The translations under genes were made by a program, and so were the position numbers. Positions 444 through 48,991 of a stretch of DNA of 64,000 nucleotides are shown piece by piece. Below the pieces are notes generated by a model. That model was not told the origin of the DNA, did not search any database, and worked only from the letters and a program-made list of their open reading frames with translations. The stretch comes from Octopus sinensis (Eukaryota). The stretch is from NCBI RefSeq assembly GCF_006345805.1, contig NC_043001.1:81530001-81594000 (forward strand), in the 5' to 3' direction. The first letter of the stretch is position 1. Each line of letters opens with the position of its first letter.

Positions 444-830
444 CTCTTTTACTTGTTTCGGTCATTTGACTGTGGCCATGCTGGAGCACCGCATTTAATC
501 AAGCAACTCGACCCCAAGACTTATTCTTTGTAAACCCAGTACTTATTCTATCAGTCTGTTTTGACGAACCGCTAAGTTACGGGGACATAAACACACCAGC
601 ATTGGTTGTCAAGCAATGCTAGAGGGACAAACACAGACACACAAACACACACACATACATATATATACATATATGCGACGAGCTTCTTTCAGTTTCTGTC
701 TACCAAATGCACTCACAAGGCTTTGGTCGGCCCGAGGCTATAGTAGAAGACACTTGCCCAAGGTGCCACGCAGTGGGACTGAACCCGGAACCATGTGGTT
801 GGTAAACAAGCTACTTACCACACAGCCACT
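444..830 (-). mobile_element. tRNA-derived SINE (octopus OR-type, CORE-like), near full length
   Basis: tRNA-like head with GGTTCAGTCCC B box, CCTTGGGCAAG core, TA/TG microsatellite, conserved tail; other copies at 10878-11275, 41282-41510 and 53527-53900. Confidence 0.8.
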
Positions 831-9580: not shown

Positions 9581-11084
9581 CAGGGGTTGGACAAAATAAC
9601 GGAAACACCTTAAAATTTCAAACAAATTTATTTTAATATGGGGTAGCATTTGGCAGAAATGCATTTTTGAGGATGTAGATTTCAATTATGGTTATTTTTC
9701 TAGAAAAAAAAAAGGAAAAATTTACTAAGATCATGAAAATTAGTGGTGACATAGTTCTAAGCAGAGGAAAGGAAAAAGAGCTGAAACTCTTTGGCAGTAA
9801 TTACAGCTTGAATTCTATGAGGTATGGACTCGTATAAAGTTTGAATTGTTTCCAAAGGAATTTTTGTCCATTCTTCAGCTAAAACAGTCTCCAGTTCCTG
9901 TAGTGATGATGGTGGAGGATATCGACCCCTTACTTGTTTTTCTAAAATGCACCATAAACGTTCAATAATATTGAGATCTGGGGACTGTGGTGGCCAGATA
10001 AGATGTTCAACTTCACTAGAATGTTCCTCATGCCATGCCATTCAGTAACAACTTTAGCTGTGTGAATTGGTGCATTATCATCCTGAAAGACTACATTTCC
10101 CTCTGGAAACAGTACCACAACCATAGGATGAACCTGATCAGATAAAATGCTTAAATTGTCTTGACTATTAATTCTGCCATGAAGAGAAACCATTGAGTCA
10201 ACAAATCTCCAAGATATAGCCCCACCCCAGATTATCACAGATCTTCCTCCATGTTTAACAATTGGAAGAAGGCAATCTAGGTCAAATGCTTCTTTTGGCT
10301 GTCACCACACATGTACTCGGCCGGTGGTTGGAAATGAGGTAAAGGATGACTTGTCCAAGAAAATAACATTCTTCCACTGCTCTAGAGATCAATTCTGTAG
10401 GTTTTTACTCCACTCTAAGTACTTTGCAACATTTGTTTTTTAAAGTAGTGGTTTTCTGATTGCAGCCCTCCCATGAAATCGGGCTCTGTGCAGCTCCCGG
10501 CAAACAGTTTTTGTACAAACTGGGTTCTTGAGATGGTCGTTAAGCTCTGCAGTAATTTTGGGAGCTGTACTTTTGTGATCCTTAAGAGTCCGATGGTCCC
10601 TATCTGAAAGTTTTGGTTTTCTTCTGAAGTTTTGTTTCAACGAGGAGGTTTTTTCCCCCTTTCTCAAAGGTTGTCATTACCTTTGAGAGAGTACTTGATG
10701 CACCAAACATTTCAGCTGTTTTCATAACGCTAGCGCCTGCCATACGAACACCAACAATTTGACCTCTTTGAAAGTCCAATAGATCTGTCATTTTAATGAA
10801 TTTTAATTACCTTTTTCTGATGATATCTGAAAAGAAACAACAATTTTAGCAAAACATATTAAGCAACACTAATAATACTCTTTTACTTGTTTCAGTCATT
10901 TGACTGTGGCCATGCTGGAGCACCGCCTTTAGTCGAGCAAATTGACCCTGGGACTTATTCTTTGTAAGCCCAGTACTTATTCTATCGGTCTCTTTTGCCG
11001 AACCGCTAAGTGACAGGGACGTAAACACACCAGCATCGGTTGTCAAGCAATGCTAGAGGGACAAACACAGACACACAAACACAT

Positions 11085-11125
<41 letters not shown>

Positions 11126-14919: not shown

Positions 14920-14922
14920 ATG
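14920..14922 (+). CDS. RPL18: RPL18 exon 1 coding part (ATG only)
   Basis: CCACC-ATG followed by donor GTGAGT; joins in frame to exon 2. Confidence 0.9.
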
Positions 14923-15047: not shown

Positions 15048-15134
15048 GGTATCGATATTTGCCATCGATTTGAGAGGAAAGTGAGGAGAAAAGCCCCCAA
15101 AAGCAATGATATCTATCTCAGGTTACTCGTCAAG
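15048..15134 (+). CDS. RPL18: RPL18 exon 2
   Basis: [29 protein letters not shown]; CAG/GTAAG boundaries; matches eL18 N-terminus. Confidence 0.97.
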
Positions 15135-16372
15135 GTAAGACCACCACATGCGCTTTATTTCTTGTTATATTATGTTAAATATCTTCTTTTTCAACATTAT
15201 ATTATATAAATGACTAATGTATGGAAAAAAATCCATCCAAATATGTGCATAACTTGTATAAAATTCTATTTCTTCCCACGCACACGTGAACGAAAATAAA
15301 AATGGTCTAATGTATAGTGGAAGCCGCTTATTGTTATCACTTGCGGTTTTTTTTTCCCCCCCGACAGTAATCGTAATTAGTGGATATTGTTACATTCTTT
15401 GTTTAATGTTAGCTCGTTTATTGTTAAGGGAGGTTTTGTTCAAATGATCCCAAAAAGCGGATTCTCGGCGGAATGAAATGAGATTGAAGAATTTGATTCG
15501 CTTAAACTTCAATAATATTAAACGTTGGATATTTTTTACTGCCTCTATCACTTGCAACCTCGTACTGAGATTGGCTTAATTGCAATATTTACATAAAACT
15601 CCCACCGTGGGGACACAAGACAAATATACTCCACGTGTAAGTTTTAAGGCATCACCGTTATGGCGATGAATACGCACACTCGGTGTTTAGGGTTACGCCG
15701 AAAACGGGTGGTGTGCGTATGAAAGCAACTGTATTTGGACATAAAAATAGGGGTTGGTTGTTAGACGGTGTATTGTCATCCCCTTAGCTGTCCTTAATGA
15801 TTAATGATTAATGTTGTAGTCAATATCCTTCTGCTCCTTTAATATAAAAGCTTTAGGTTAGAGTCTACAGGGGCCGGGGTTTGCGTTGTGTACAGGCTGT
15901 GTATTGTTTTCCACAACATTTATTCACTGTTATATATAGTAATTGAGCCACGTGGGTGTTGTTAAACTTGAAGCATAAGTATTCCAACCATGGCCATCAC
16001 ATTTGTAAATAACTTCGTTGATATATGTAACGAATGCTTGGAATTAGTTTACTTATGTGAAATGAAACACCTTAATTCAATCCTTTTGATACTAAACCGC
16101 CTATGGTACAAACTTATTTTAAAGTGATCTAAATTTAAAACTTGAGACAAGAATGCTAATTTATGTTCCCGACACCAGGTTGAGTTATATTCGAATTTAA
16201 TTAAAACAAAGCCAATATGTCTAAGAGTTAAAACATTAAAATACAGTGGAAAGAAAAGTATAAGGTGCATCTTTATTGGAGATGATGGGATAGAGATTTG
16301 TCATAGTTCAGGTAGTAATCACTTATTGAAATGTAGTAGACAAAATTCTGCACATGTAGGATGTAGAATGGT

Positions 16373-16424
16373 TGTCTCCGATGAAGTGAAAATAATTCTG
16401 ATTCTTTTGCAGCTGCTGGAGACA
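16373..16424 (+). pseudogene. Degenerate family A C/D snoRNA copy (A1)
   Basis: TGTCTCC...GGAGACA stem and D' CTGA retained; C' box and D guide deleted. Confidence 0.45.
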
Positions 16425-17789
16425 CCATTTCTGTAGGTGATCGACCACACTTTGATACAATCATGTGGTTCTTTGAATGATCATTCACATAGTTGGGTAG
16501 TTACATACTTGCATCATCATATAATTTTTTTTTTCGGTTGGTTTTTAAATGCAAGATTAAGGTGAACATTAAATAGTCCTTTAAACAGATTAGTACATTG
16601 AGGGGACAGGTTTATTTATATATATATACACACATACATACAGTGTAAGAAAAGAAACATGACCGTGTGATTTTTTGTGTTCATAGCTCACAAATAGGCA
16701 GAAACATCCTTATTTTTGACTGGAAAACCATACGGCTGCCTGCAATTTGGGTTCAAAAAATTAAAACCCATAGAAAATGTATGATGTATTGAGCTCCATT
16801 GTCTTCATAGTGCCAACACCACTTAAAGTGTTTTATGTTTTTTCTTATTATTATTTGAAAACGGATTAATTTTCTGCTGCATTCTAATATATAGATATAG
16901 GAAGAAGGTAAGCTTCAAGGTGTAGGAAGTTAGTGTGCTTCAAGCAGTCTTTAGAAGAAATAAAAATACAACTTTCAGGAACAATAGAGGTTTATTGGCA
17001 CAGGAAGTTGTGTATTTTCCATGTATTGAATAAAAAAGGTTATTTTACAGTTCATGGTTAGCAACTGGGATTGCTGTATATGCAAATAAAACATCCAAAA
17101 TTAGGGAATGGGGGAAGATGTAATCCAGGCTACATGTTTCATAGCTAGCGGAACCTTGGAAGTAGTAATTATCCAAACAAATGGTAGATCGCAAGCTATA
17201 CTTTGTGCCAAGAATATGTTGATTACTCAGTTTACCTTGTCATTGGGAGATCCCATTTATTGGATACATTAGCTGCATGTTGGGTGGGCTCAGAGGGTAA
17301 AAACCTACTGAAAATGCAGTGTTTCTTTTAAATTCAATTAGCAAAATGTCTCAGTATCTGGGGAAGCATTATACTCCTATCGAGTCCACATGGGATCTTC
17401 TATAAAGTTGCTTGATTTTAGATATATACTATTTACTCTTGCATCTGTTCAACCCTTTTGCTACTATCTTTTTAAACTACACTGTCTTAATTTTAATGTT
17501 ATTCAGCTATTTCAAACAATTTTGATGGCAGTTTTAATATTACATCACTTCAAAACAGGTTGTTATCAAAAGAGCTTATTCATTAATGACAATATTTATT
17601 AACAGTTAGGGTAGTATCTGAAAAGGTTGGTTAACTATCAGACAACAGAATATAGTGTCTAAAGTGGTAGACTCTCTGGAAAGATTTTTTGAGACCCAGA
17701 GCTGCTGGCACAGGTACACAACCAGTGTTAGCAGCTTTTAATTTGGAAATGTAGATTAAGTGGTTCTAGTGGGTAAATTAGAGTATGAG

Positions 17790-17861
17790 TGTCTCAATGA
17801 GGAAGAAAAATTCTGATTATCTTTGTGATGACCTTTCAGGATCACCCAACTGATGGAGACA
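17790..17861 (+). ncRNA. Box C/D snoRNA candidate, family A (A2)
   Basis: TGTCTC stem, ATGAGGA (C), CTGA (D'), GTGATGA (C'), CTGA (D), GAGACA. Confidence 0.7.
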
Positions 17862-19105
17862 CAACTACTAATGACGGTTGTTAAATGCAATATTAGTCTA
17901 TCAGAGCATCAGTGCCCGTTTAAATGATTGGGTTGGCCATATCCAGCCAAAATATTGTATTTGTTTTGTTCAAACTGGCTGAGTTTGGCCTCTTACACCT
18001 ACTCTACAATGTCATTCTAAAAGTATGCAATCAAAGCTGAGAGATATGGCATGAGTAATTGAAAACAAGCGATGTGGGTAAAATAAGCATTGCATTTGAC
18101 AGTAATCTGAATACTAAAGGCAGCTGGTCTTGTAACTAAACAAGAAGCCACTGGTACATATCTTGTTTGTCAACTGGTTCTTGGGTTGGAGAGTCTCCCT
18201 CAGTGAAAATTATAATGTTCCTAGTTGTATGCCGAGCAAGTGTCTTCTACCATAATCTCATTAGATCAAATCTGAAGGAGATATAAACAGGCCATTGGTT
18301 CTAGCACCTTTCAATTCTTTAGGCTGTTTCCTTTTTCATTTAAGTTTAGAAAATGGAGAAATGTAGCGTTAATGAGTGCAAGTGCTAGGGTTGATACTGA
18401 TATGTCACCTTACAGGTTTCTTCTTTTCTAATAAATTACATAGATCCAAATGTTTGTCATTTTCCAACTTCGTTTTATGCTCATAAACTTGCTGACTGGA
18501 GTTGGTTAGGTTGAAAGGATCCAACTGTTGGCTCTATTGTTTGCTTTGACTGTCTTAGTGCCAACCATTCAACAGTGAATGCTGGGTAGTCCCTCCCTAT
18601 TTTTTTTTTTTTAATCCTAAAATTTGAAGGATAGTTGACTTCGTGCTGCATTCCAGGGTCATCGAGAAAGGTTTCCATGATTTCAAAATTAAATAGTTAA
18701 ATCTGTATTAAAGGTATACTATTTATTTATACACCAAAACACGGAAAATCTTAAATTTTTCTTGTATTACTTAGTAGGTTTCAATATGAGCTCCCTTTGT
18801 TGCACGGCAAATACCTAAGCAATAGTCAACCTCCCTCCAGGTGCGCTGAATCATATCAGGATTCACAGTCACTATTGCTGCATAGATTCTTGCTTTTTTT
18901 CTGCGTAGAAATTTCCGGTTTCTTTAAAAAGGTTAAAACAACTGACTTAAACTCAGTGTGATGCATCTCACACTGCGCTTTCTGCTGTACAGTTGCCACA
19001 ATTTCTGTGGAGTGACTGGTCAGATGCTCACTAATGAAATAGTGATTTCAGCCAGGTTGATAACGAAAGGGTTAAGTGGTTCTAGGGTTTAAATTAGAAT
19101 AGTAG

Positions 19106-19179
19106 TGTCTCAATGAGGAAGAAAGAATTCTGATCATCTTTTATGATGACTAGTCAGGATCACCCAACTGATGGAGACA
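19106..19179 (+). ncRNA. Box C/D snoRNA candidate, family A (A3)
   Basis: Same box layout with ATGATGA as C'; extended terminal stem TAGTAGTGTCTC/GAGACACCACTACTA. Confidence 0.72.
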
Positions 19180-19877
19180 CCACTACTAATGTCAGTTGTT
19201 AAATGCGATATTAGACTACCAGACCATCTGCAAATATCAAAACTCTTACAGCTGTTCTACAGTCCCACATCGATTTCATGCAGATTGCTTGCTTATAGCT
19301 AGTGCATCTGACAACTAAAATCACAGAAACCTTTCCCGGTGACCCTGTATTGGCTGCAACAAGCTGGATATATAAAGTAAACTTAGTGGTTGCCATTACA
19401 ATTGAATTGTACGTCATCTTGCATCCGTTTAAACCTTTTATCATCATAACATCATTATTCGGTTATCAAAGGAGTTGATAATATTTACTAACAGTTATGG
19501 TATTATCCGAAAAGGTTGGTTAACTTATAGAGTGTCTAAAGTAAGGCAGCGAGCTGGCAGGAACATTAGCACACTGGATGAAATGCTTAGGGGTATTTCG
19601 TCTGTCTTTACATTCTGAGTTCAAATTCCGTCGAGGTTGACTTGGCCTTTCATCCTTTTGGGGTTGATAAATTAAGTACCAGTGGTGTACTGGAGTCAAT
19701 CAACTTGACCCCCCCCCCCCCCCCACACCAAAACAAAATTTCTGTCCTTGTGTCTAGAGAACAGAATATAGTGCCTAAAGTGGTAGACTCTCTGGAAATT
19801 TATTTTTTTTATAGACCCAGCGTTGCTGGCACAGGTACATTTCCTGTGTGTTAGCTTTTAATTTGGAAATGTAGATT

Positions 19878-20090
19878 AACCATTTCGTTAACTGTATTTA
19901 TTTTGAGATGCTCTCTGTTTCTTTCAATTAGTTTAAATATAACAAAGAATTTAGTAAAACAACTTAATCATTCAGCTAGTGTTAGGAACATAAATTGTGA
20001 CTAAGGTTTGGTGGAAGATTTTGAAAACAAGACATTTGTACTACAGAGCCAGAGCCGGTTTCAGCCAGGTTGATAATGAAATGGTTAACT
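19878..20090. mobile_element. piggyBac-type MITE at TTAA (related copies at 21031-21245 and 24310-24515)
   Basis: TTAA-CC(A/C)TTTCGTTA...AAA(T/G)GG-TTAA termini. Confidence 0.75.
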
Positions 20091-20118
20091 GGTTCTAGGG
20101 TTTAAATTAGAATAGTAG

Positions 20119-20192
20119 TGTCTCAATGAGGAAGAAAGAATTCTGATCATCTTTTATGATGACTAGTCAGGATCACCCAACTGATGGAGACA
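20119..20192 (+). ncRNA. Box C/D snoRNA candidate, family A (A4)
   Basis: Identical to A3. Confidence 0.72.
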
Positions 20193-21275
20193 CCACTACT
20201 AATGTCAGTTGTTAAATGCGATATTAGACTACCAGACCATCTGCAATTCTAGTGCCCGTTAGAAGACTAAACCCATTAGCATTAAATTGTTGGAGCCCTG
20301 GGAACAGTGAGCAAAAATCTCGAAGTACGTGGAACAAATAGGGGCTGCAATAAGGGGGAGCACTTGCTGAAAACAGCACTGCTTGGAACCAATAGGCCAT
20401 ATCCAGCCACTTTTGTTTCAATAAGTTATGTAGATCTAAATGTTTGTTATTTTCATGCAGATTGCTTGCTTATAGCTAGTGCATCTGACAACTAAAATCA
20501 CAGAAACCTTTCTCGGTGACCCTGTATTGGCTGCAACAAGCTGGATATATAAAGTAAACTTAGTGGTTGCCATTACAATTGAATTGTACGTCATCTTGCA
20601 TCCGTTTAAACCTTTTATCATCATAACATCATTATTCGGTTATCAAAGGAGCTTATTCATTGATAATATTTAACAGTTATGGTATTATCCGAAAAGGTTG
20701 GTTAACTTATAGAGTGTCTAAAGTAAGGCAGTGAGCTGGCAGGAACATTAGCACACTGGATGAAATGCTTAGGGGTATTTCGTCTGTCTTTACATTCTGA
20801 GATCAAATTCCGTCGAGGTTGACTTCGCCTTTCATCCTTTTGGGGGTCGATAAATTAAGTACCAGTGGTGTACTGGAGTCAATCAACTTGCCCCCCCCCC
20901 CCACAACATTTCTGTCCTTGTGTCTAGAGCAGAATAGAATATAGTGCCTAAAGTGGTAAACTCTCTGGAAATTTTTTTTTTTTTTATAGACCCAGCGCTG
21001 CTGGCACAGGTACATTTCCTGTGTGTAGATTAACCCTTTCGTTAACTGTATTTATTTTGAGATGCTCTGTGTTTCTTTCAATTAGTTTAAATATAACAAA
21101 GAATTTAGTAAAACAACTTAGTTATCATTCAGCTAGTGTTAGGAACATAAATTGTGACTAAGGTTTGGTGGAAGATTTTGAAAACAAGACAGTTGTACTA
21201 CAGAGCCTGAGCCGGTTTCAGCCAGGTTGATAATGAAAGGGTTAACTGGTTCTAGAGTTTAAATTAAAATAGTAG

Positions 21276-21346
21276 TGTCTCAATGAGGAAGAAAGAATTC
21301 TGATCTTTTATGATGACTAGTCAGGATCACCCAACTGATGGAGACA
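21276..21346 (+). ncRNA. Box C/D snoRNA candidate, family A (A5)
   Basis: As A3, with a 3-nt deletion between D' and C'. Confidence 0.7.
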
Positions 21347-24998: not shown

Positions 24999-25106
24999 CT
25001 TTACCGCTTTTTGGCCCGAAGGACTAACTCCAAGTTCAACAAGATTATTCTGAAGCGTCTCTGCATGAGCAGAAGCAACAGACCACCAGTTCCCCTATCG
25101 CGTATT
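24999..25106 (+). CDS. RPL18: RPL18 exon 3
   Basis: [36 protein letters not shown]; CAG/GTAAGT. Confidence 0.97.
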
Positions 25107-26056: not shown

Positions 26057-26152
26057 GTACGACACATGAAGGGACAAGACGAGGATAAGATAGCTGTGGT
26101 TGTTTCTACAGTCACCGATGATATTCGTCTGCACATGGTGCCCAAGTTGAAG
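26057..26152 (+). CDS. RPL18: RPL18 exon 4
   Basis: VRHMKGQDEDKIAVVVSTVTDDIRLHMVPKLK; TAG/GTAAGT; ends in phase 0. Confidence 0.97.
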
Positions 26153-26917
26153 GTAAGTTTTCTCTTTGGTGTTTGTAATGTACTATTTCTCTCTTCTTTT
26201 ATGGATGATGTCTCTTGTTTTCTTTGTTTCCTAACTTCAGTGAATTTACTGTAAATGTCAGTTGCTTGTATGATTGGCATTGTTTCATTTGCAGCTGAGC
26301 CAAACTGTTTTTTCTGTTGATGAAATGAAAGTACTAAGAATGCCCTCTGTCCCAGCCTAAAATACCGCTTAATTTCATTTGTGGGTTGTTGCTCAGATTT
26401 CGTTAGTTGTGACCCTTTGTATTCTTTAGTGTAGATATTGAGCAACCAACACTTACCTGGATATATATTTGGTGTTGGACCTGTTGCTCTTCCATTATTA
26501 CAAACTTAACAAAGGTATTATGTGCGTGTGGCTTAGTGGTTATAGTATTCAGTTCATAATCATGTGGTCATGTGTTGAATTCCCAGTGATGCATCGTTCT
26601 TGAGCAAGACACTTTATTTCACGTTGCTCCAATCCACTCAGCTGCCAAAAATGAGTAGTACCTGTATTTCAAAGGGCCGGCCTTGTCACACTGTGTCGTG
26701 CTGAATCGCCCATGAGAACTGCTTTTGTGTGGAGTGCTTAGTCAGATGCATGTTACTTTCGTAAGCAGGCTGTTCCTTTGATCAGATCAACTGGAAGCCT
26801 CATAACTGGCAGTGCCATTCAAGTCATACATATACACAGGATCTAGCAACATTTAGCAATCAGCTGTTTCTCTTGGTACCATACTTAGTTGCTATTGTCA
26901 GGTTCAGGGAGTGGAAG

Positions 26918-26965
26918 TGTCTCCAACGAGAAAGAAATACTGATTCTTGTGATGACCATCAGAAC
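26918..26965 (+). pseudogene. Family A relic in intron 4 (A8)
   Basis: TGTCTCC...AGAAAGAAATACTGATTCTTGTGATGACC; 3' half lost. Confidence 0.45.
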
Positions 26966-27509
26966 TTGCATTGTAAGTGTACCATCTCTACTTTTTGGGT
27001 GTATCTAGCAAATTTTAAACAAATTGGGTTTTTATTGTAAGTTTTTCCAAGAGATTCTTTAAACATCAGTGAAGAACTTCAGAATCTTTTGTGGCCTTTA
27101 ATATATTTTATATTTAGTGGGTTATATAACAACAATCTTTAGAGAATTGTCAAAATTAATGGTGTTAGGGAGGGCTTCCAGCCATAAGAACAATGCTAAA
27201 TCACACTGGAGTTTGGTTCTGCCCCTCAGCTCACCAGCTCTCTTCATACCGTCCAGCCCATGCCAGCATGGACAATAGGGGTTAAATGATAATGATGCTG
27301 AATGGAGTTTTCTTTTCAAAGATGGAAAAATTCTAATGATTAATAGGTAGGATATTGGGTCCAACAACCTAGGTAAGGATTGCAGTTTTTGACTTTTCTC
27401 TATCTAGTGTTGTAGCCTTGCAAGTAAAGGTACAACAATCGTGAATTCTCTATATGAATGCGAGTTTTAATGTGAGGATCTTAAAAATTAATACAAGCAC
27501 TGCTTATAG

Positions 27510-27586
27510 TGACCACTATGATGATAACTACTTCCGTGGGTCTGATTGTTTAGTGATTTGCATCTAGCCAATCCACTGAGTGGTCA
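27510..27586 (+). ncRNA. Box C/D snoRNA candidate, family B (B1, diverged)
   Basis: TGACCACT stem, ATGATGA, CTGA, GTGATTT, guide TCTAGCCAATCCA, CTGA, AGTGGTCA. Confidence 0.8.
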
Positions 27587-29391
27587 GTTAATATTTATTT
27601 TTGGCTGTTTATATACTGACATGTCTAAGACTAATACAAGCATCCTCTTTGACAGTGATCGAAATTGAAAGTTCCCATGTTGATTTTTGTTCCAAACACC
27701 AGTTGATTTATTCAATTTTCATTAACATAGTAAATTAATTGAAACAAGCACTATATTTCAACAGAATTAAGACAATGAAGGGCTCAGTGTTACGGACTTG
27801 TTTTGAATTAAAAAGTTCATTGCTTAGTCTTGAATACAACAGACCTGTTTGGGTTTTGTTTAATATATTCTTGATTTGAAGCAGATTTGGCTGTTATTTT
27901 TATTGAGTTGTAATTCTAAAATTTGTTTCGAATCAAACTGAATTAGCAATACTTGAGAATATTGATGATGTATTTTTCCACAGCATTTCTCTAATTTGTT
28001 AGTTTTACAAGAGAACTACTGAGTCTTTACAACAAAACATACCAAGTTGTGGATGGGAAGTTTGCAAGTTTTTTTTGGGTTTTTTTTCTCCATTCATTAA
28101 ACTGTGTCCATGCTGGGTCACCTCTTTGAATACATAAACACACCAGCAATGGTTGACAAGCAGTGGTGGGGTACAAACACAAAGGCACACATATATACAT
28201 ACACACACAGAGTGGCTCAGAAGTGACCTATTCCTATTAAATTTATTACTTGATGAATATTGGCCGGGTAGGTGGATGGGCTACCACGGATCCATGGAAT
28301 GGCCTGCAAAGTCCCCAGGCCTCAGTCCTCTGCACTCTTTTCTCTGGGGAGTGCTAAAAAAAAACAATTGGGTGTTCAGTGTTAGACCAAAAACTTTCAA
28401 TGATCTGGAACAGAGCATCGTAAATACATGGCAAGATATAACACCAGAGCTGTGTAAAAAAAAAAACTTACTGATTCAACTATTGAACGATGCTGTAACT
28501 GTATTGCAAATAATGATTTACATATTGAACATTTGAGGTAACCTTTAACAATAAAGAGAGAATGCAGTGGGGCTGATGCATGTAGGAGAAACTAACTTCA
28601 CAAAACACATCAACCTCCTCCCTTAACCATTTTGGGCTCAAACCAGCTATATCTGGCGAAAATATTCAATGTTTTATGTTTGTTGTGTCCAGCTTCTCAC
28701 ACCTATCCTACAATGTCTTAAAAATAAGCAGTCACCACTATGAAAATCTCAAAGCTACAAGATAATCCCTGATTAATTCAAAACAATGTGAATAAATGGG
28801 CATAACATGACTGAATAATCTGAATGCTAAAGGGTTGATATCCACTTTTTCATGTTTGTAAGGGTTGGATGGCACATGCACACACACACACACACACACA
28901 CTTTGTTCAGTTTCTGTCTACCAAGCTCACTCAAGAGACTTTGCTTAACTCTGGACTATAGTAGACACTTCATGATGGTGCATCAGTGGACTGAACCCAA
29001 GACCACATGGTTGGTAGACAAACTATTTTAAAACCTTGTTCTAATACACATATAAAGGGGTAATGGGTAAAAAAAAAAAAACACAACCCTTCAGTAATGA
29101 ATGACCATACGATTGCACTTCAAATATTATCCTCCGAGGCAGATGCCTGGGCAACGTCGTTTATGGAAGATCAGCAGTCACCAATGCATACTAGCCTCTT
29201 CTCTCCATGACAGTGATGTTATCCAAGGGTGAAGCAAAGTCCGGAAAAGCTTGACGCCAGTTATGTCACAACTCGTTTCTACAGCTGAGTGAACTGGAGC
29301 GACGTAGAATAAAGGGTCTTGCTCAAGAACATAGTACATAGTCCAGTCTGGGAATTGAACTCACTATCTCCTGATTGTAAGCGCAATGCTC

Positions 29392-29462
29392 TGACCACTA
29401 TGATGAAAATTTTGTCCGTCAGATTGTTTGTGATTGTATCTAGCCAATCCACTGAGTGGTCA
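29392..29462 (+). ncRNA. Box C/D snoRNA candidate, family B (B2)
   Basis: C and D boxes, stem and D guide intact; D' region altered. Confidence 0.7.
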
Positions 29463-30044
29463 AATTTGTGTGCACAAGACTTATTTTTTATAGCCAGGAA
29501 GATTCTACATCTTTGTTTTGATATAGTGTGGAGATGGTCATTATATTTGTTCAATTTTGCTATTAGTCATTAAAATATATTTGAGATTTCCCCTGTCTCT
29601 TTTGTTAGGGTTTGCATCTCTTTTTTTTTTTTCATGCTGGCATGGATTATATGAATTTTGTTGGCAGATTTTTGTCTGCCAAGAGAATTGGCGAGACTTA
29701 GCAATGGTGGTTACCAACAGTTAGTACTAGGTTTGCTCTTTCACAATGATTTACTCAAAGGGATTTTCAGTCGCTTATTCCTATTGTTTGTGGAGCGGTT
29801 CTTAATATTTAAGACATGACATTCTTCTACAAATGCTACAAACATTACATAGTACAAGGGCCATATATTATTCACTTGTGCGTTATAAATGGAATCTGGC
29901 CACCATCTGTGTGACTTTGGTTTACAGTAATGAATATAATATTAATTCCTTGACCACCTGCAAGATTTAAGCCCTTCTCACCATAGCTCATTTGCTAGTG
30001 TTGTTACTTGTTCCCCTTTATTAACTTCAACTAACTGATCTGAC

Positions 30045-30119
30045 TGACCACTATGATGAAAACTTCTTCCGTGGCTCTGATTGTTTGTGATTGTATCTAG
30101 CCAATCCACTGAGTGATCA
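30045..30119 (+). ncRNA. Box C/D snoRNA candidate, family B (B3)
   Basis: All boxes intact; one substitution in the 3' stem. Confidence 0.8.
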
Positions 30120-30760
30120 AATTTATATACACATGGTAGGGAAATATCTTGTATCTTTCTTTTGATATAAGAACGGTTGTTACATTAGTTATAGGCTGAT
30201 AAACTGTGAGATAATAAAATAATTTAAATGAATTGTTTTAGGTAGATTTTTTTGATGGCTTTATCTGAGATATATCTGGGAGTACAGGGTTATTTGTACG
30301 AGGTCAAATGACTGCCAACAGTTTTTATAATTGAATCTTTCATTAGTCCAAGTTATAATGTGCCATTTTTTGTTTGCTTAAAGGAAAGGCTGGCTTGGAG
30401 ATATTGGCAGAGGAGATATTCATTCCTCTTTATTAGCAATGTATAGACGTCAGAAATTATTAAAGACACCTGTTAGGCATCTTTGATGTTTATATACTGC
30501 AGATCTAATAGATATATTCAAAAGGAATTTTCAATCCCTTGTTCCAATTATTTTTGGACAAGATCTTGACAAATTTTCCTTCTCTTTCTACAAACTATAT
30601 GAAAAAGGTACTTTAATTCAACCAGGATATTGCAACAAGGGGGCCAAATATACTCATTTGTGCATTGTATGCTCCTCAATCTAAATGCAATTTATCCATG
30701 TGACTTTTATTTACAGTAATGAGTATAATATTAATTCCAACATCAACTAACTGATCTGAC

Positions 30761-30835
30761 TGACCACTATGATGAAAACTTCTTCCGTGGCTCTGATTGT
30801 TTGTGATTGTATCTAGCCAATCCACTGAGTGGTCA
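30761..30835 (+). ncRNA. Box C/D snoRNA candidate, family B (B4)
   Basis: 75 nt, canonical C and D boxes, 8-bp terminal stem. Confidence 0.85.
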
Positions 30836-31515
30836 AATTTATATACACATGGTAGGGAAATATCTTATGTCTTTTTGATATAGTGCAGGAGTGATTGTTA
30901 TGTCAGTTGTAGGCTGGTAAACTATGAGGTAATAAAATCTATTTAGAGCTTCTTGTATCTTATGTCTGTTTAATTATTGTTAATCAGTAAAATGTATCTG
31001 GGATTTCTATCTCTTTTGTAATGTTTGTTAGGTCTAATGTCTTATATGAATTTTTTTTTGACAGCCTGATGGCTTTATCCGGGGCATAATATAATATATC
31101 AAGAAGCACTGGATTATTTGTACGAGGTCAAGTAACTACCAAGGGTCTTAATAATTTAATTTTCCATCGGTCTAAGTTATGATGTCCCATTTTTTGTTAG
31201 ATCCCTTCTTCCAATTATTTTTGGACAGGAACTTGACAAATTTTTCTACTTTCTACCAGCTTTACATAATCATGTTGAAAAAGCTACTGTAATTCAACAT
31301 GGATATTGTAACAAAGGGGTCAAATATACTCATTTGTGCATTATATGCTCCTCAATCTAAATGCAATCTATCCCCATCTGTGTGACTTTGGTTTTCAGTA
31401 ATGAGTATAATATTAATTCCTTGACCACCTGCAAGATTTAAGCCCTTCTCACCATAGCTCATTTGCCAGTGTTGTTACGTGTTCCTCTTTATTAACTTCA
31501 ACTAACTGATTTGAC

Positions 31516-31590
31516 TGACCACTATGATGAAAACTTCTTCCGTGGCTCTGATTGTTTGTGATTGTATCTAGCCAATCCACTGAGTGGTCA
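31516..31590 (+). ncRNA. Box C/D snoRNA candidate, family B (B5)
   Basis: Identical to B4. Confidence 0.85.
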
Positions 31591-32174
31591 AATTTATATA
31601 CACATGGTAGGAAAATATCTTGTATCTTTCTTTTGATATAAAAATGGTTGTTACATTAGTTATAGGCTGATAAACTGTGAGGTAACAAAATAATTTAAAT
31701 GAATTGTTTTGGGTAGATTTTTTTGATGGCCTGATGGCTTTATCTGAGACATATCTAGGAGCACAGGGTTATTTGTACGGGGTCAAATGACTGCCAACAG
31801 TTTTTATAATTGAATCTTCCATTAGTCCAAGTTATAATGTGCCATTTTTTGTTTGCTTAAAGGAAAGGCTGGCTTGGAGATATTCATTACTCTTTATTAG
31901 CAATGTATGGACATCAGAAGTTGGGCATCTTTGATGTTTATATACTGCAGATCTAATAAATATTTTCAATCTCTTGTTCCAATTATTTTTGGACAGGTAC
32001 TTGACCAATTTTCCTTCTACTCTTTCTACAAACTATATGAAGGAGGTACTGTAATTCAACCAGGATATTGCAACAAGGGGGCCAAATATACTCATTTGTG
32101 CATTGTATGCTCCTCAATCTAAATGCAATTTATCCATGTGGCTTTTAATTCCAACTTCAACTAACTGATCTGAC

Positions 32175-32249
32175 TGACCACTATGATGAAAACTTCTTCC
32201 GTGGCTCTGATTGTTTGTGATTGTATCTAGCCAATCCACTGAGTGGTCA
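32175..32249 (+). ncRNA. Box C/D snoRNA candidate, family B (B6)
   Basis: Identical to B4. Confidence 0.85.
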
Positions 32250-32920
32250 AATTTATATACACATGGTAGGGAAATATCTTGTGTCTTTTTGATATAGTGC
32301 AGGAGTGATTGTTATGTCAGTTGTAGGCTGGTAAACTATGAGGTAATAAAATCTATTTAGAGCTTCTTGTATCTTATGTCTGTTTAATTATTGTTAATCA
32401 GTAAAATGCATCTGGGATTTCTATCTCTTTTGTAATGTTTGTTAGGTCTAATGTCTTATATGAATTTTTTTTTTGACAGCCTGATGGCTTTATCCGGGGC
32501 ATAATATAATATATCAAGAAGCACTGGATTATTTGTACGAGGTCAAGTAACTACCAAGGGTCTTAATAATTTAATTTTCCATCGGTCCAAATTATGATGT
32601 GCCATTTTTTGTTAGATCCCTTGTTCCAATTATTTTTGGACAGGAACTTGACAAATTTTTCTACTTTCTACCAGCTTTACATAACCATGTTGAAAAAGCT
32701 ACTGTAATTCAACACGGATATTGTAACAAAGGGGTCAAATATACTCATATGCTCCTCAATCTAAATGCAATCTATCCCCATCTGTGTGACTTTGGTTTAC
32801 AGTAATGAGTATAATATTAATTCCTTGACCACCTGCAAGATTTAAGCCCTTCTCACCATAGCCCATTTGCCAGTGTTGTTATGTGTTCCTCTTTTATTAA
32901 CTTCAACTAACTGATCTGAC

Positions 32921-32995
32921 TGACCACTATGATGAAAACTTCTTCCGTGGCTCTGATTGTTTGTGATTGTATCTAGCCAATCCACTGAGTGGTCA
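32921..32995 (+). ncRNA. Box C/D snoRNA candidate, family B (B7)
   Basis: Identical to B4. Confidence 0.85.
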
Positions 32996-33716
32996 AATTT
33001 ATATACACATGGTAGGGAAATATCTTGTATCTTTCTTTTGATATAAAAATGGTTGTTACTTTAGTTATAGGCTGATAAACTGTGAGGTAACAAAATAATT
33101 TAAATGAATTGTTTTAGGTAAATTCTTTTGATGGCCTGATGGCTTTATCTGAGACATATATCTAGGAGCACAGGGTTATTTGTACGAGGTCAAATGACTG
33201 CCAACAGTTTTTATAATTGAATCTTCCATTAGTCCAAGTTATAATGTGCCATTTTTTGTTTGCTTAAAGGAAAGGCTGGCTTGGAGATATTCATTGCTCT
33301 TTATTAGCAATGTACGGACGTCAGAAATTATTAAAGACACCTGTTAGGCATCTTTGATGTTTATATACTGCAGATCTAATAGATATATTCAAAAGGAATT
33401 TTCAATCCCTTGTTCCAATTATTTTTGGACAGGAACGTGACAAATTTTTCTACTTTCTACCAGCTTTACATAACCATGTTGAAAAAGCTACTGTAATTCA
33501 ACACGGATATTGTAACAAAGGGGTCAAATATACTCATTTGTGCATTGTATGCTCCTCAATCTAAATGCAATCTATACCTATCTGTGTGACTTTGGTTTAC
33601 AGTAATGAGTATAGTAATTCCTTGACCACCTGCAAGGTTTAAGCCCTTCTCACCATAGCCCATTTGCCAGTGTTGTTACGTGTTCCTCTTTATTAACTTC
33701 AACTAACTGATTTGAC

Positions 33717-33791
33717 TGACCACTATGATGAAAACTTCTTCCGTGGCTCTGATTGTTTGTGATTGTATCTAGCCAATCCACTGAGTGGTCA
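33717..33791 (+). ncRNA. Box C/D snoRNA candidate, family B (B8)
   Basis: Identical to B4; 3' flank unrelated to the repeat units. Confidence 0.85.
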
Positions 33792-34827
33792 AGTGTGTTT
33801 GCATTGGTCTTAATTTTTAGAGCAAGGAAATTTCCTTGTTGTGAAGTTGTTTGTGCATCGGTATGCTGCAGAAATGGTTATTACATTGAGGTAATACATT
33901 ATATTTAGGGCTTCTCTGGTATTTATCTGTTCCATTCAGTTTTACTGTTTATAACAGAAGCCTTAAATTTTATAATGTTGTGTATGTTCATTAAGTTTAC
34001 CTCTTCAGGATTCAGATAATTTTGGCAACTGTTATACTTTTTATTACATTGTTTTCAATCAATCGTGCATTATTTAATAGCTTCAGGATTTCGATGCTGT
34101 GGTTGTTTGTGTTTAGAATGACATTATTAGGTCAGTATGAGGCTAAATCCAGCTGGTTTGATAAAACAAGTAGAATATTTGATCCAGGTGTGGCCGGTTT
34201 AAATATTGAGATTACAGCTGGGTTATTGAGTGTTCATCAAAGGACAACAATAAATGCCTTGAGGGAACTTGCACACTTGTCTTTGTGCTTTTTTTTTTTT
34301 TTTTTTCCTCCAGATGGCAGAATGGCAATTATCAGAGCATTGTATAGAATGCTTAATGCTATTTCTTCAGCATCCCTATGCTCTCTCTCTCAGGTTCAAA
34401 TTGCATCTGTGTGCACCAATGTGTATGTTGGTGGAGGACATTACTCATTGGTGCTGTGGCAAATGAGATAAAATCTACTTTGATTCTTAGCTCACTTAAA
34501 TATCCTGAATATTTTTTATACTAATCTGTCTCTTGTATGGGATAGTTGCACCAACTGAACTATCACTTACAACCCTTTCAGCTTTCTGTCAAACACCTTT
34601 GAATTTTTAGGCTTTTTATGCTACTGTGGTTTCAAGCCTTTTTGGCATGAGCAATCTCGTGCTTAAAAAAGTAGTCGGGGTTGCCTGCAGTTTTTATACA
34701 TGATTTCTTTTTCAATGGTGGTTTGTGACTTGTGTGATATTTAGCTGCTACTTTCTCGTTTACAGCTGTTCAAATAAAGTTCTATGGTAATATTATCTTG
34801 TACTGAGTGCCTGCTTTGTCTTTCCAG

Positions 34828-34951
34828 ATCTGTGCTCTGAAGATGACAGACCAAGCTCGCGCTAGAGTTCTTAAGAGCGAGGGTGAGATTTTGACTTTTG
34901 ACCAGTTGGCAATGATAGCACCCAAGGGCAGACATACCTCCCTGCTACAGG
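34828..34951 (+). CDS. RPL18: RPL18 exon 5
   Basis: [41 protein letters not shown]; CAG/GTAAGT. Confidence 0.97.
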
Positions 34952-35073: not shown

Positions 35074-35143
35074 GACGTCGTAAAGGCCGCAAGGTTTATC
35101 GCCATTTCGGTCCGGCACCTGGTGTTCCCCACAGTCACACTAA
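35074..35143 (+). CDS. RPL18: RPL18 exon 6
   Basis: (G)[22 protein letters not shown](K); CAG/GTAAGT; splice phases consistent. Confidence 0.97.
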
Positions 35144-35521: not shown

Positions 35522-35597
35522 GCCATATGTACGTTCTAAAGGCCGAAAATTTGAACGGGCTCGGGGTCGCAGGAAGAGCAGAGGTTTCAAGAACTAA
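35522..35597 (+). CDS. RPL18: RPL18 exon 7 with stop codon
   Basis: PYVRSKGRKFERARGRRKSRGFKN*; joined ORF is 187 aa. Confidence 0.97.
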
Positions 35598-40380: not shown

Positions 40381-42605
40381 TAAATAAAAAAGTTATATGT
40401 TAGAAATTAATTGAAACACGGGTGTATTTTGGTCAGAAATAGAGTAACGAAAGGGTTAACCTGTTTTATGTTGAAACTGTCCTGTTGCCTCAACTCTACA
40501 ATGCCATTCTGAAATTAAACAATCACTTCAACGTCTGTAAACTATAAGATAATGTGTGATAATTTATAACAATATAAACTTCACAATTGACAATCTGAAT
40601 ACTAAAAGGGTTGTGGTGTTGTACATCTGGATTAGTTCTATTACTTCATGTACGGCACTGTTCCTTGGAGTTTTTGTGGAACAATATGAGAAAAGCTGCT
40701 CTAGTCTTGACAATCAGTTTGCAGTCTTCTCATGAAACATGTCTAGTCATGTGGAGATATAACCTTAGCTGGAAATAGGTGATGGTTGTTGACAAGGGCA
40801 TTGGGCCAAAGTAAAACCTGTCTTGTCAAACCCTATCTGACTGATACTAGTGTCAGTATTTCGCATGGATCCTCACAACTAAATAATGTTTAAAAAGAAA
40901 TTATATTTTTATAATTATTTATTAGATGTATTTAAAAACTGCTAAAATATTTTTGTAGAAGTAAATCCAATTTATTGTACATAAATTTTAACAACAAACC
41001 CTTTACATGGTCCCTGGTTGAGAACCACTGATGTAGATCGTTATTTTGTATTAAATACCTGTAATGGTAGTGTTGCAAATACTGATAAAACAATCTTGTA
41101 GAATAGCAAGTGTGATTTGCTGATCTCTTATTCTCAGTTTGTCTTGCCTCTAGTTTAGCTGCTAGCCATTCTGCATATCTTAATGTCTTGTCATGCAACG
41201 CTTAATTCCGTCCTGGATTACCTCTTTTACTTTTGTATTCTTGTAGTTGTCTCCCTTTGTCAAAGTAGTATACTCTCTTTTCTCTTTTACTTGTTTCAGT
41301 CATTTGACTGCGGCCATGCTGGAGCACCGCCATCAGTCGAGCGAATCGACCCCGGGACTTTTTCTTTGTTAGCCCAGTACTTATTCTATCGGTCTCTTTT
41401 GCTGAACCGCCAAGTGACGGGGACGCAAACACACCAGCATCGGTTGTCAAGCAATGCTGGGGGACTGAATCCGGACCCATGTGGTTGGTTAGCAAGCTAC
41501 TTACCACACAGTCACTTTTTGTTTTTTCTCAACCATTGCAGTGGTCCTCAAGGATGCAAGTTCATGTAAATCTGTACACGGTTTGAGTAGAAACTAAAAG
41601 TATAGAGAAATATGAACTCACATTTTACATGTATACACTGAGTTTGTAAAACCGAAGAGAAAAATAAATCAAGTGATGTGGTGGTTTCCATGCCACACCT
41701 GACACCACTGTTATGCAGCATTGTTGTAATTTTCTTGTTTTAGACTATCTCACTGCCATTATTCTTGAAATGGTGTTGCAATAGATTGTGCACCTGGTAA
41801 TAGAAAGATAACCCATGATTGGAGCTACTGTTTTAGTGTTTTCCATTGGGCAGATGTCCTAAGCAAGCTACTTTGTACATTATTTTCCTTGTTCCTTGCT
41901 ACATCTTTGGGTGGGGTAGTTGGTAGTAATTTTATGTTTGGACAACAGTCTTGATAATGTAAATTTTATTAAATGCTTTATTTTCAAAATTAATTTGCAA
42001 AAAAGAAAAAGGAGCAGTATATTTTATACTGTTTACAATTGGTCTCATGTTCTAATCTTGATTGTTGCTTTCACTGCTTCATCCATGTACACTCCAGCCT
42101 TCTTCATCTGTCTTATGGTTGTATAAGAATTTCAAACCTGACCCTGTATTTGATCTGCAGATGTACACTGTTCTCATTCCACTCTGCAATCATGACACTT
42201 TTCCCTTCGGTTGAATTATGTGAATTAGCAGGACTTTGTGAACAATTCAGACTTAATTGTAAACTTGGATTATTTTTGAAAATTTTATCAAAAAGAAAAC
42301 CTGAAAGTGTAGCCAGTGTTATGTCTATCAGAGATAGTCACTCATTGGGATATGATGATTATTTAAGCAGTAGGAGTGGCTGTGTGGTAAGTAGCTTGTT
42401 TACCAATCACATGATTCTGGGTTCAGTCCCACTGTGTGGCACCTTGGGCCGACCAAAGCCTTGTCAGTGGATTTGGTAGACGGAAACTGAAAAGAAGCCT
42501 GTTGTATATGTGTTTTGACAGAATAAAGTTATTTGTCAGCATGGATAAGAATTGAAAAAAAAAAAAGGAATCCAAAGATAACAAAAGATTATTTGTACAA
42601 ATTCT

Positions 42606-48498: not shown

Positions 48499-48991
48499 CT
48501 GAAATAAAGAAGACAAATAGAAAGAGAATTACAAAGCTTGGTAATTTTCTATGCATAAAGACGTATATACAACATATATCATCACCAACATTTTTATATA
48601 CATACATATACTCTTTTACTTGTTTCAGTCATTTGACTGTGGCCATGCTGGAGCACCGCCGTTTAGTCGAGCAACTCGACCCCAGGGCTTATCCTTTGTA
48701 AGCCTAGTACTTATTCTATCAGTCTCGTTCGTCCCGAACGGCTAAGTAGCGGGGGATGTAAACACACCAACATCGGTTGTCAAGCGATGGTCGATTTGCT
48801 CGATCGACTAAAGGCGGTGTTCCAGCATGGCCACAGTAAAATGACTTAAACAAGTAAAAGAGTATACATAAATTCACAGACATACATACGCACAAATGTG
48901 CTTCAATTTATTCACCATGTCAAAATATGGATATATATATATATATATAGTTATCTCCCTTGAATAGTCCACAGCTAATAATAATACTTAC

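What the first reader, a model, noticed from the sequence alone, without database searches (positions are those of the whole stretch)
27510..33791. Eight-copy box C/D snoRNA array (family B) in a single RPL18 intron
Seen: eight 71-77 nt cassettes with an 8-bp terminal stem and C, D', C' and D boxes. B4-B8 are identical although X and Y flanks differ strongly. The D guide TCTAGCCAATCCA is invariant even in diverged B1 and B2. Inference: AGCCAATCC pairs 9 nt with the conserved LSU rRNA motif GGAUUGGCU, and the D+5 rule would put the 2'-O-methyl on its first U. The D' guide (complement AGCCACGGAAG) loosely resembles an 18S segment just 5' of the conserved GCAAUAACAGG motif. Many C/D snoRNAs in one animal intron is atypical.
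Basis: partly seen in the sequence, partly recalled or inferred. Interest (0 to 1): 0.78.

Follow-up and report, generated by a model that had tools for sequence, protein, structure and literature searches.

The report
Octopus RPL18 intron snoRNA array
One intron of the octopus ribosomal protein L18 gene carries eight tandem copies of a small guide RNA gene (box C/D snoRNA) that is conserved in octopus, argonaut and cuttlefish, a real but fairly ordinary feature whose RNA targets are still only predicted.

Summary
The window is Octopus sinensis chromosome DNA. Eight 71-77 nt cassettes sit on the sense strand of one 8.7-kb RPL18 intron (26153-34827). Each has a C box, a D box, a 7-8 bp terminal stem and two guide regions.

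The cassette is a genuine, selected box C/D snoRNA. Apart from the neighbouring family A cassettes, it is the only intron sequence still alignable with Argonauta and cuttlefish. The boxes and both guide cores are conserved, and the stem shows two compensatory pair changes. RPL18 holds 8, 8, 5, 6 and 5 copies in five cephalopods, and none in a scallop, a snail or a chiton. No Rfam family matches.

The targets remain unproven, because no cephalopod rRNA could be obtained. On 120 real eukaryotic rDNA loci:
- The D guide pairs 9 bp with the large-subunit motif GGAUUGGCU. Shuffled guides do as well 12-19% of the time.
- The D' guide fits large-subunit GGCCAUGGAAG(U) with 11-12 bp.
- Neither predicted site is a mapped methylation site in fly or Arabidopsis.

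Verdict: a new member of a known kind, in an uncommon tandem layout. Interest is moderate to low.

The parts
27510..27586 (+). B1, an old diverged paralogue (77 nt). Its D' guide carries a position-2 variant (GTGGGT) and its C' region has a 2-nt insertion.
   Evidence: 90.9 bits. Orthologous copies with the same private changes occur in O. vulgaris and O. bimaculoides.
29392..29462 (+). B2 (71 nt). The D' box is lost (CAGA) and the D' guide has decayed, but the D guide, C box, D box and stem are intact. An antisense tRNA-derived SINE abuts its 5' end.
   Evidence: 87.2 bits. The same state is seen in O. vulgaris. The O. bimaculoides copy 2 also has a decayed D' guide.
30045..30119 (+). B3 (75 nt). 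It equals the B4-B8 sequence except for a G>A change in the 3' stem half, which creates a C-A mismatch.
   Evidence: 101.9 bits. The O. vulgaris orthologue has the intact stem.
30761..30835 (+). B4, the reference copy. Stem 30761-30767 pairs with 30829-30835. C box ATGATGA 30769-30775. D' guide 30776-30792. D' box CTGA 30793-30796. C' box GTGATTG about 30803-30809. D guide 30810-30824. D box CTGA 30825-30828.
   Evidence: 106.9 bits.
31516..31590 (+). B5, identical to B4.
32175..32249 (+). B6, identical to B4.
32921..32995 (+). B7, identical to B4.
33717..33791 (+). B8, identical to B4. It ends 1036 nt upstream of the 3' splice site.
26153..34827 (+). RPL18 intron 4 (8675 nt), the host of all eight cassettes. 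The donor is GTAAGT and the acceptor is ttgtctttccAG.
   Evidence: The spliced CDS translates to a protein identical to O. sinensis/O. vulgaris RPL18.
29903..33874 (+). Higher-order tandem repeat: a two-cassette unit (cassette-X spacer-cassette-Y spacer) of about 1.4 kb, present about three times.
   Evidence: families D4, D8, D10, D18 with spacings of 1405-1479; spacer identities.
26057..26152 (+). RPL18 coding exon 4 (amino acids 68-99), the upstream flank of the host intron.
34828..34951 (+). RPL18 coding exon 5, the downstream flank of the host intron.

Best explanation
The eight cassettes are tandemly amplified genes for one box C/D small nucleolar RNA, a family shared by cephalopods and absent from Rfam. 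They are transcribed as part of the RPL18 pre-mRNA.

Inferred mechanism, from general box C/D biology:
- In each copy the C box (AUGAUGA), the D box (CUGA) and the 7-8 bp terminal stem would form the kink-turn.
- That kink-turn would recruit Snu13, Nop58, Nop56 and fibrillarin.
- The bound particle would protect a roughly 75-nt RNA while the rest of the excised intron is degraded.
- The RNA then guides fibrillarin to 2'-O-methylate the nucleotide paired to the fifth guide position upstream of box D and of box D'.

Most likely targets, inferred and not shown:
- The first U of large-subunit rRNA AAGGAU*UGGCUCU, just 5' of the ES27 expansion segment. By my own count this is about human U2873 or yeast U1937.
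- The A of large-subunit GGCCA*UGGAAGU, about 40 nt 5' of GUGUAACAACUCACC. By my own count this is about human A1963 or yeast A1238.

The array grew by duplication of a two-cassette 1.4-kb unit. Its copies are kept identical by selection, by gene conversion, or by both.

No cassette sits at the roughly 70-80 nt distance from the 3' splice site that favours splicing-coupled assembly. Release of the inner copies therefore probably needs the long terminal stem plus endonucleolytic cuts between copies.

Sub-confidences: real, selected box C/D snoRNA family about 0.9; D-guide large-subunit site about 0.4; D'-guide large-subunit site about 0.45.
For: Anatomy:
- All eight copies have the C box, the D box and the stem. 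Seven have a D' box, and all have a degenerate C' box.

Selection:
- Between Octopus and Argonauta or cuttlefish, only exons and the family A and B cassettes align across the RPL18 gene.
- In 20 distinct cassettes the C, D' and D boxes are almost fully conserved. The cores CTTCCGTGGCT and GCCAATCCA are conserved in nearly all copies, apart from the decayed D' guides of B2 and small variants in B1 and two cuttlefish copies.
- The stem is 96% paired, with two fully compensatory changes (C-G to U-A and A-U to G-C). No shuffle out of 500 reached the observed covariation score, and slid registers pair only 21-52%.
- B4-B8 are identical although their X and Y spacers are 82-89% identical with indels.

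Distribution:
- A covariance model finds exactly 8, 8, 5, 6 and 5 copies in O. sinensis, O. vulgaris, O. bimaculoides, Argonauta hians and Acanthosepion pharaonis (75-107 bits). It finds none in scallop, Gigantopelta or chiton RPL18.

Host:
- The cassettes lie on the sense strand of a ribosomal protein gene whose first exon begins with a pyrimidine tract.

Targets:
- The stretch of each guide that is conserved across cephalopods coincides with the stretch complementary to the two large-subunit motifs.
- The D' core reaches its score in only 2-6% of shuffles.
Against: - No expression data could be consulted.
- No cephalopod rRNA or snRNA sequence was available, so targets were tested only on heterologous rDNA.
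- The D-guide duplex is short (9 bp, and 8 bp in three cuttlefish copies) and is not significant against shuffles at 12-19%.
- An equal-scoring site lies in the variable 18S helix-44 tip of one metazoan-like rDNA.
- The two predicted sites are not methylated in the Drosophila or Arabidopsis maps, and those tables list no human or yeast equivalent. The predicted sites are therefore either lineage-specific or wrong.
- Rfam gives only generic C/D hits of 20-27 bits, below every gathering score.
- Cassette identity could partly reflect recent duplication rather than selection on every copy.
Confidence: 0.8

Rival explanations
1. It is a real box C/D snoRNA family, but with other targets. Candidates are the variable tip of 18S helix 44 (ES12), a cephalopod-specific expansion segment, an snRNA or an mRNA. 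Alternatively it is an 'orphan' or chaperone-type snoRNA that pairs without methylating.
For: - Shuffled guides match the 9-bp D-guide hit 12-19% of the time.
- A metazoan-like rDNA (L059) has CGGAUUGGCU in the 18S helix-44 tip with the same score, and other metazoan-type sequences read YYGGAUYGG there.
- The predicted large-subunit sites are unmethylated in fly and Arabidopsis.
Against: - The guide cores are conserved in nearly all copies from octopods to cuttlefish, which favours an equally invariant target.
- The two large-subunit motifs are in the conserved core.
- The conserved span of each guide coincides with the large-subunit complementarity.
Confidence: 0.35
2. Only one or a few copies are functional. 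The rest are recent passenger duplicates within a tandem intronic repeat, and their identity reflects youth or gene conversion rather than selection on dosage.
For: - Same-type spacers are 93-98% identical, so the last duplications are recent.
- B3 already carries a stem-breaking change, and B2 has lost its D' box and guide.
- Copy number varies from 5 to 8 within Octopus.
Against: - There is zero difference between cassettes next to X and Y spacers that differ by 11-18%. The chance of that over 75 nt is below about 2e-4, from my own arithmetic.
- B1 and B2 are retained as orthologues in three Octopus species.
- Multiple intact copies are kept independently in Argonauta and cuttlefish.
Confidence: 0.25
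3. It is not a snoRNA gene. Instead the cassettes would be a satellite-like repeat or a transposon-derived module that happens to contain C/D-like motifs.
For: - The cassettes sit inside a 1.4-kb higher-order tandem repeat.
- A SINE abuts B2, and the window is rich in SINEs.
Against: - The cassette, not the repeat around it, is what is conserved across cephalopods.
- The boxes are almost fully conserved and the stem covaries.
- The cassette is found only in RPL18 introns, always on the sense strand, with no poly(A) tail, and nowhere else in the 64-kb window.
Confidence: 0.03

Closest known systems
Intron-encoded box C/D snoRNAs in ribosomal protein genes (for example SNORD32A/33/34/35A in RPL13A)
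   Same: About 75 nt long, with C, D', C' and D boxes, a terminal stem and two antisense elements. They lie on the sense strand of a TOP-type ribosomal protein host and are released from the spliced intron.
   Different: In the RPL13A case there is one snoRNA per intron and each has different guides. Here there are eight near-identical copies in one intron, with guides that match no Rfam family.
Intronic snoRNA gene clusters of rice and Drosophila (Liang et al. 2002 NAR; Huang et al. 2004 JMB; titles seen)
   Same: Several snoRNA genes lie inside a single intron, which implies processing of a polycistronic intronic precursor.
   Different: From my own knowledge, the rice clusters mostly mix different snoRNAs, and the Drosophila clusters named in that title are H/ACA. 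Here there is a homogeneous tandem array of one C/D snoRNA in a mollusc. I could not read those papers.
Mammalian SNORD115/SNORD116 tandem arrays
   Same: Tandemly repeated, near-identical C/D snoRNA copies embedded in a repeated unit.
   Different: From my own knowledge, those copies each sit in their own intron between repeated non-coding exons of an imprinted host, and they are orphans. Here there are no exon-like splice signals between copies, and the host is a protein-coding ribosomal protein gene.
sno-lncRNAs (intron-derived long RNAs with snoRNA ends; PMC4234469)
   Same: The stated prerequisite, two or more snoRNA genes in one intron, is met eight-fold.
   Different: No transcript evidence is available here. 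Whether the cephalopod machinery leaves such RNAs or cuts between copies is unknown.
Arabidopsis snoR22 sites 25S Am1263 and Um1278
   Same: These are lineage-specific methylations in the same large-subunit neighbourhood as the predicted D' target, roughly 12 and 27 nt downstream by my count.
   Different: They are different nucleotides with a different guide, and no homology is implied.

Membership tests
Box C/D snoRNA | C box RUGAUGA near the 5' end and D box CUGA near the 3' end | tested here: met
   ATGATGA and CTGA are present in all 8 copies. In all 20 distinct cephalopod sequences the D box and the UGAUGA core of the C box are fully conserved, and one cuttlefish copy reads GTGATGA.
Box C/D snoRNA | A terminal stem that brings the C and D boxes together | tested here: met
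   The stem is 7 bp, plus 1 pair that uses the D-box A. It is 96% paired, with 2 compensatory pairs between octopods and cuttlefish, and slid registers pair only 21-52%.
Box C/D snoRNA | Internal D' and C' boxes | tested here: met
   D' CTGA is present in 7 of 8 copies (B2 has CAGA). C' is degenerate: GUGAUUG in Octopus and UGAAUG or UGAUUG in cuttlefish.
Box C/D snoRNA | An antisense element of 10 nt or more upstream of D or D', complementary to rRNA or snRNA, with the target opposite guide position 5 | tested here: inconclusive
   On heterologous rDNA only: the D guide gives 9 bp to large-subunit GGAUUGGCU (shuffle frequency 0.12-0.19), and the D' guide gives 11-12 bp with 2 G-U pairs to large-subunit GGCCAUGGAAG(U) (0.02-0.06). 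No cephalopod rRNA was available.
Box C/D snoRNA | A stable RNA of about 60-100 nt bound by fibrillarin, Nop56, Nop58 and Snu13 | not testable with these tools
   No RNA-seq or immunoprecipitation data are accessible.
Box C/D snoRNA | Sense-strand intronic location in an expressed host gene | tested here: met
   All copies are on the + strand within RPL18 intron 4.
Any specific Rfam C/D family (SNORD127, snoZ196, SNORD18 and others) | A score at or above the family's gathering threshold | tested here: not met
   The best hits are 27.2 bits against a threshold of 45 (SNORD127) and 27.0 against 55 (snoZ196). The alignments share only the boxes, not the guides.
SNORD115/116-type array (one copy per intron of a repeated exon-intron unit) | Splice sites or exons between successive copies | tested here: not met
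   The 8.7-kb intron contains no xGGTRAGT donor-like site and no recursive-splice-like site. Nothing but the cassettes (families A and B) is conserved in the introns.
snoRNA-derived retroposon or SINE | Dispersed copies with poly(A) tails and target-site duplications, outside the host gene and in either orientation | tested here: not met
   Copies occur only in RPL18 introns, are tandem and are always sense-strand. The 3' flank is AAATTTATATAC rather than a poly(A) tail. There is no other copy in the 64-kb window. A genome-wide search was not possible.

The most novel reading that the evidence does not exclude
Cephalopods process a long intron of a highly expressed ribosomal protein gene as a polycistronic snoRNA precursor. 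Either endonucleolytic cuts between copies release all eight RNAs, or stable sno-lncRNAs of 0.7-6.3 kb remain, capped at both ends by B-cassette particles. In either case the released snoRNA would install two lineage-specific 2'-O-methyl marks on the large-subunit rRNA core: a U next to the base of ES27 and an A in domain II. Neither mark is present in fly, Arabidopsis, human or yeast.
Probability: 0.3. Interest if true: 0.55.

Novelty: new member of a known kind. Interest (0 to 1): 0.35.

Why it matters
- It adds a well-supported family to the very thin catalogue of lophotrochozoan snoRNAs. The family is absent from Rfam and conserved across cephalopods.
- It gives two concrete, testable predictions of lineage-specific rRNA methylation in conserved large-subunit core sequence.
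- The layout is a natural test of how animals mature several snoRNAs from one intron. Eight copies share one intron, and none is at the splice-coupled distance.
- The layout also tests whether sno-lncRNAs exist outside mammals.
- The differences between octopus, argonaut and cuttlefish document rapid birth, death and homogenisation of intronic snoRNA copies. Copy number runs from 5 to 8, copies are spread over different introns, and some variants are species-specific but shared between copies.

None of this overturns current understanding.

Tried and rejected
- **Rfam.** I scanned the whole window at gathering scores, and the region and the cuttlefish locus at E up to 10 and E up to 1. Only generic C/D hits appeared, so no family can be assigned.
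- **Obtaining rRNA.** A viral-contig scan for a 28S motif found nothing. The single metagenome scan gave 120 eukaryotic rDNA loci, none of them identifiable as cephalopod. I considered querying the protein database with spurious ORFs from rDNA to reach octopus rDNA. I did not run it, because cephalopod hits could not be picked out of the top 120 and the search is expensive.
- **Literature search for the guide or target strings.** It returned only primers.
- **Literature on cephalopod snoRNAs.** The only statement I read on cephalopod snoRNAs was an Rfam-based count for the giant squid.
- **Hidden exons or recursive splice sites between copies.** None were found.
- **Homologues in RPL18 of scallop, Gigantopelta and chiton.** None were found.
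Rejected on metazoan-type sequences, with only 6 contiguous pairs.
- **snRNA targets (U1, U2, U4, U5, U6) and 5S and 5.8S rRNA.** I checked these only from memory of the vertebrate sequences and saw nothing better than 7 nt. This was not a tool result.
- **Long matches (12-16 bp) to variable expansion segments of two protist rDNAs.** Dismissed as chance.
- **Papers on Drosophila and rice intronic clusters.** They could not be opened.

Full report
**What is there**

The window is Octopus sinensis DNA. Positions 11920-38597 are 100% identical to CM016863.1 of assembly GCA_006345805.1. The spliced product of the + strand gene is identical to the RPL18 protein of O. sinensis and O. vulgaris.

The coding exons all have canonical splice borders:

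| Exon | Coordinates |
|---|---|
| 1 | ends at 14922 (..CTTTCTTTTTCC..CCACCATG\|GTGAGT) |
| 2 | 15048-15134 |
| 3 | 24999-25106 |
| 4 | 26057-26152 |
| 5 | 34828-34951 |
| 6 | 35074-35143 |
| 7 | 35522-35597 |

**Anatomy**

The reference copy B4 reads as follows:

- stem TGACCAC, then T
- C box ATGATGA
- D' guide AAACTTCTTCCGTGGCT
- D' box CTGA
- spacer TTGTT
- C' box, degenerate (T)GTGATTG
- D guide TATCTAGCCAATCCA
- D box CTGA
- stem GTGGTCA

B4-B8 are identical. B3 has a G>A change that breaks one stem pair. B1 is an older paralogue with changes in the D' guide and around C'. B2 has lost the D' box (CAGA) and its D' guide, but keeps everything else. Single-sequence folding recovers the terminal stem.

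**More than chance, and under selection**

- The 17-mer that joins the D guide to the D box occurs 8 times, against 0 expected.
- The cassettes sit in a higher-order tandem repeat, a two-cassette unit of about 1.4 kb. Its two spacer types are 93-98% identical within a type. Between types they are only 82-89% identical, with indels. Yet the cassettes next to both spacer types are identical.
- I fetched the RPL18 locus of four other cephalopods. Between Octopus and Argonauta or Acanthosepion, BLAST aligns only exons, the B cassettes and a second cassette family, A. The rest of the introns does not align.
- A covariance model built from 20 distinct cassettes finds copies at 75-107 bits in every cephalopod examined, listed below. 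It finds nothing in the RPL18 loci of a scallop, the snail Gigantopelta or a chiton.

| Species | B copies in RPL18 |
|---|---|
| O. sinensis | 8 |
| O. vulgaris | 8 |
| O. bimaculoides | 5 |
| Argonauta hians | 6 |
| Acanthosepion pharaonis | 5 |

- Across the 20 sequences the C, D' and D boxes are almost fully conserved. The D' guide core CTTCCGTGGCT and the D guide core GCCAATCCA are conserved in nearly all copies, apart from the decayed D' guides of B2 and small variants in B1 and two cuttlefish copies. The D'-C' loop and the distal parts of both guides vary.
- The terminal stem is 96% paired. Two pairs change on both sides between octopods and cuttlefish (C-G to U-A and A-U to G-C). No shuffle out of 500 reached the observed covariation score, and slid registers pair only 21-52%.

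This is the signature of a functional box C/D snoRNA.

**Family assignment**

Rfam gives no hit at gathering thresholds. Below threshold there are only generic C/D matches of 20-27 bits that share the boxes, not the guides. The family is therefore not a recognisable member of any curated family.

**Targets**

No cephalopod rRNA could be reached with the tools. I therefore fetched 120 eukaryotic rDNA loci from metagenomes, using a neutral large-subunit anchor, and scanned them with the box+5 rule.

*D guide.*
- It pairs 9 Watson-Crick bp (guide positions 2-10) with AAGGAUUGGCUCU in the large subunit.
- The motif is exact in 55 of 90 sequences.
- The match is short. It is 8 bp in the three cuttlefish copies that read TTGCC. 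Shuffled guides reach the same score in 12-19% of trials.
- One metazoan-like rDNA has an equal-scoring CGGAUUGGCU in the variable tip of 18S helix 44.

*D' guide.*
- A better candidate is large-subunit GGCCAUGGAAG(U), with 11 bp for Octopus and 12 bp for cuttlefish, including 2 G-U pairs. A few taxa have GGCCACGGAAG, which needs only one G-U pair.
- This site lies about 40 nt 5' of GUGUAACAACUCACC. Shuffled guides reach its score in 2-6% of trials for the conserved 12-nt core.

*An argument beyond the statistics.* For both guides, the stretch conserved from octopods to cuttlefish coincides with the stretch complementary to these invariant large-subunit motifs. The non-complementary distal guide positions drift.

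*Comparison with known methylation maps.*
- I placed the sites by measuring distances on the real rDNA: +49 nt from the U34/snR62 site and +104 to +105 nt from the U38/snR61 site. I also relied on my recollection of the human site numbers, which is consistent with the Drosophila spacing Um2204-Gm2243.
- On that basis the predicted sites are about human U2873 and A1963, about yeast U1937 and A1238, about fly U2253 and A1452, and about Arabidopsis U1941 and A1248.
- Neither is in the Drosophila map or the Arabidopsis map. The human and yeast columns of those tables show no equivalent.
- Arabidopsis does have plant-specific Am1263 and Um1278 a few nucleotides downstream of the second site.
- If the predictions are right, these are lineage-specific methylations. 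If they are wrong, the snoRNA has another target.

**Organisation and processing**

- In Octopus all copies share intron 4.
- In Argonauta three copies lie in intron 2 and three in intron 4, interleaved with family A cassettes. One block is repeated at an offset of 4413 nt.
- In cuttlefish the five copies are split 2+1+2 over three introns. One copy ends about 78 nt upstream of a 3' splice site, which is the classic position for splicing-coupled C/D assembly (established knowledge: Hirose and Steitz 2001).
- In the window B8 ends 1036 nt from the 3' splice site, and there are no donor-like or recursive-splice-like sites between copies. Splicing-coupled, one-per-intron maturation therefore cannot apply.
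- The long terminal stem fits splicing-independent assembly.
- Releasing the inner copies would need endonucleolytic cuts. Without them, the intron would leave sno-lncRNAs, whose stated prerequisite is two or more snoRNAs in one intron (PMC4234469).
- Intronic snoRNA clusters as such are known in rice and Drosophila (titles). The layout is therefore uncommon rather than unprecedented.

**Evolution**

- B1 and B2 are orthologous in three Octopus species. The B3-B8 block has three copies in O. bimaculoides and six in O. sinensis and O. vulgaris.
- Some variants are species-specific but shared between copies, which points to concerted evolution or independent amplification:
  - TACC at guide position 12 in alternate O. 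vulgaris copies
  - GTGGTTA and TGCTTC in O. bimaculoides
  - TATCCAGCC and CTGATAAT in Argonauta

**Verdict**

The snoRNA reading is well supported. The D-guide target is plausible but unproven. This is a new member of a known kind in an uncommon tandem layout, and interest is moderate to low.

Noticed in passing
window 17790-17861, 19095-19179, 20108-20192, 21265-21346 (+); degenerate copy 26915-26962: A second C/D-like cassette family ('A') has four copies in RPL18 intron 2 and a decayed copy in intron 4. It has the stem GTGTCTC/GAGACAC, a variant C box AUGAGGA, a good internal AUGAUGA and CUGA boxes. It is conserved in Argonauta and cuttlefish. The cuttlefish version's D guide pairs 13 bp with the extreme 5' end of 18S (CUGGUUGAUCCUG); the Octopus version pairs less well.
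   Followed up: partly
window 29100-29399 (antisense) and 26563-26649 (sense): A tRNA-derived SINE abuts B2. The antisense SINE head (AGTGGTCAGAGC) overlaps the 5' stem half TGACCACT of B2, and the same junction is present in O. vulgaris. The sense copy at 26563-26649 contains CTCCAATCCACTCAG, which resembles the D guide plus D box (CCAATCCACTGAG). This is probably chance.
   Followed up: no
L001 (Argonauta hians) 15215-16485 versus 19628-20898: A block of alternating A and B cassettes is repeated at a constant offset of 4413 nt, which places copies in both intron 2 and intron 4. It could be a real segmental duplication or an assembly artefact.
   Followed up: partly
L005 (Acanthosepion pharaonis) 16609-16685: One cuttlefish B copy ends about 78 nt upstream of the last 3' splice site, the canonical splice-coupled position. 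No Octopus copy is so placed. Cuttlefish also lacks the intron between exons 3 and 4.
   Followed up: partly
window 30776-30792 with 30810-30824 (every B copy): The 3' end of the D' guide (UGGCU) is complementary to the start of the D guide core (AGCCA). The two pair in the minimum-energy fold. The relation is kept in cuttlefish TAGCC copies.
   Followed up: no
window 30114 (B3): The stem-breaking G>A change in B3 is private to the O. sinensis assembly. The O. vulgaris orthologue has G.
   Followed up: partly
window 1-288 and 757-1044: A 288-nt direct repeat is 100% identical at a spacing of 756 nt, at the very start of the window (family D19).
   Followed up: no
window 441-674, 10875-11108, 41279-41512, 48608-48663, 53525-53759: There are multiple copies of an abundant octopus SINE (..CTTTTACTTGTTTCAGTCATTTGACTGTGGCCATGCTGGAGCACCGCC..), often followed by CA/TA microsatellites (families D2, D7, D20).
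   Followed up: no
window 58800-59205 and 62691-62993: There is a GT/GAGTGT-rich low-complexity tract with a strong GC skew (0.44 in 58-60 kb) and a 29-nt tandem repeat array (families D3 and D6).
   Followed up: no
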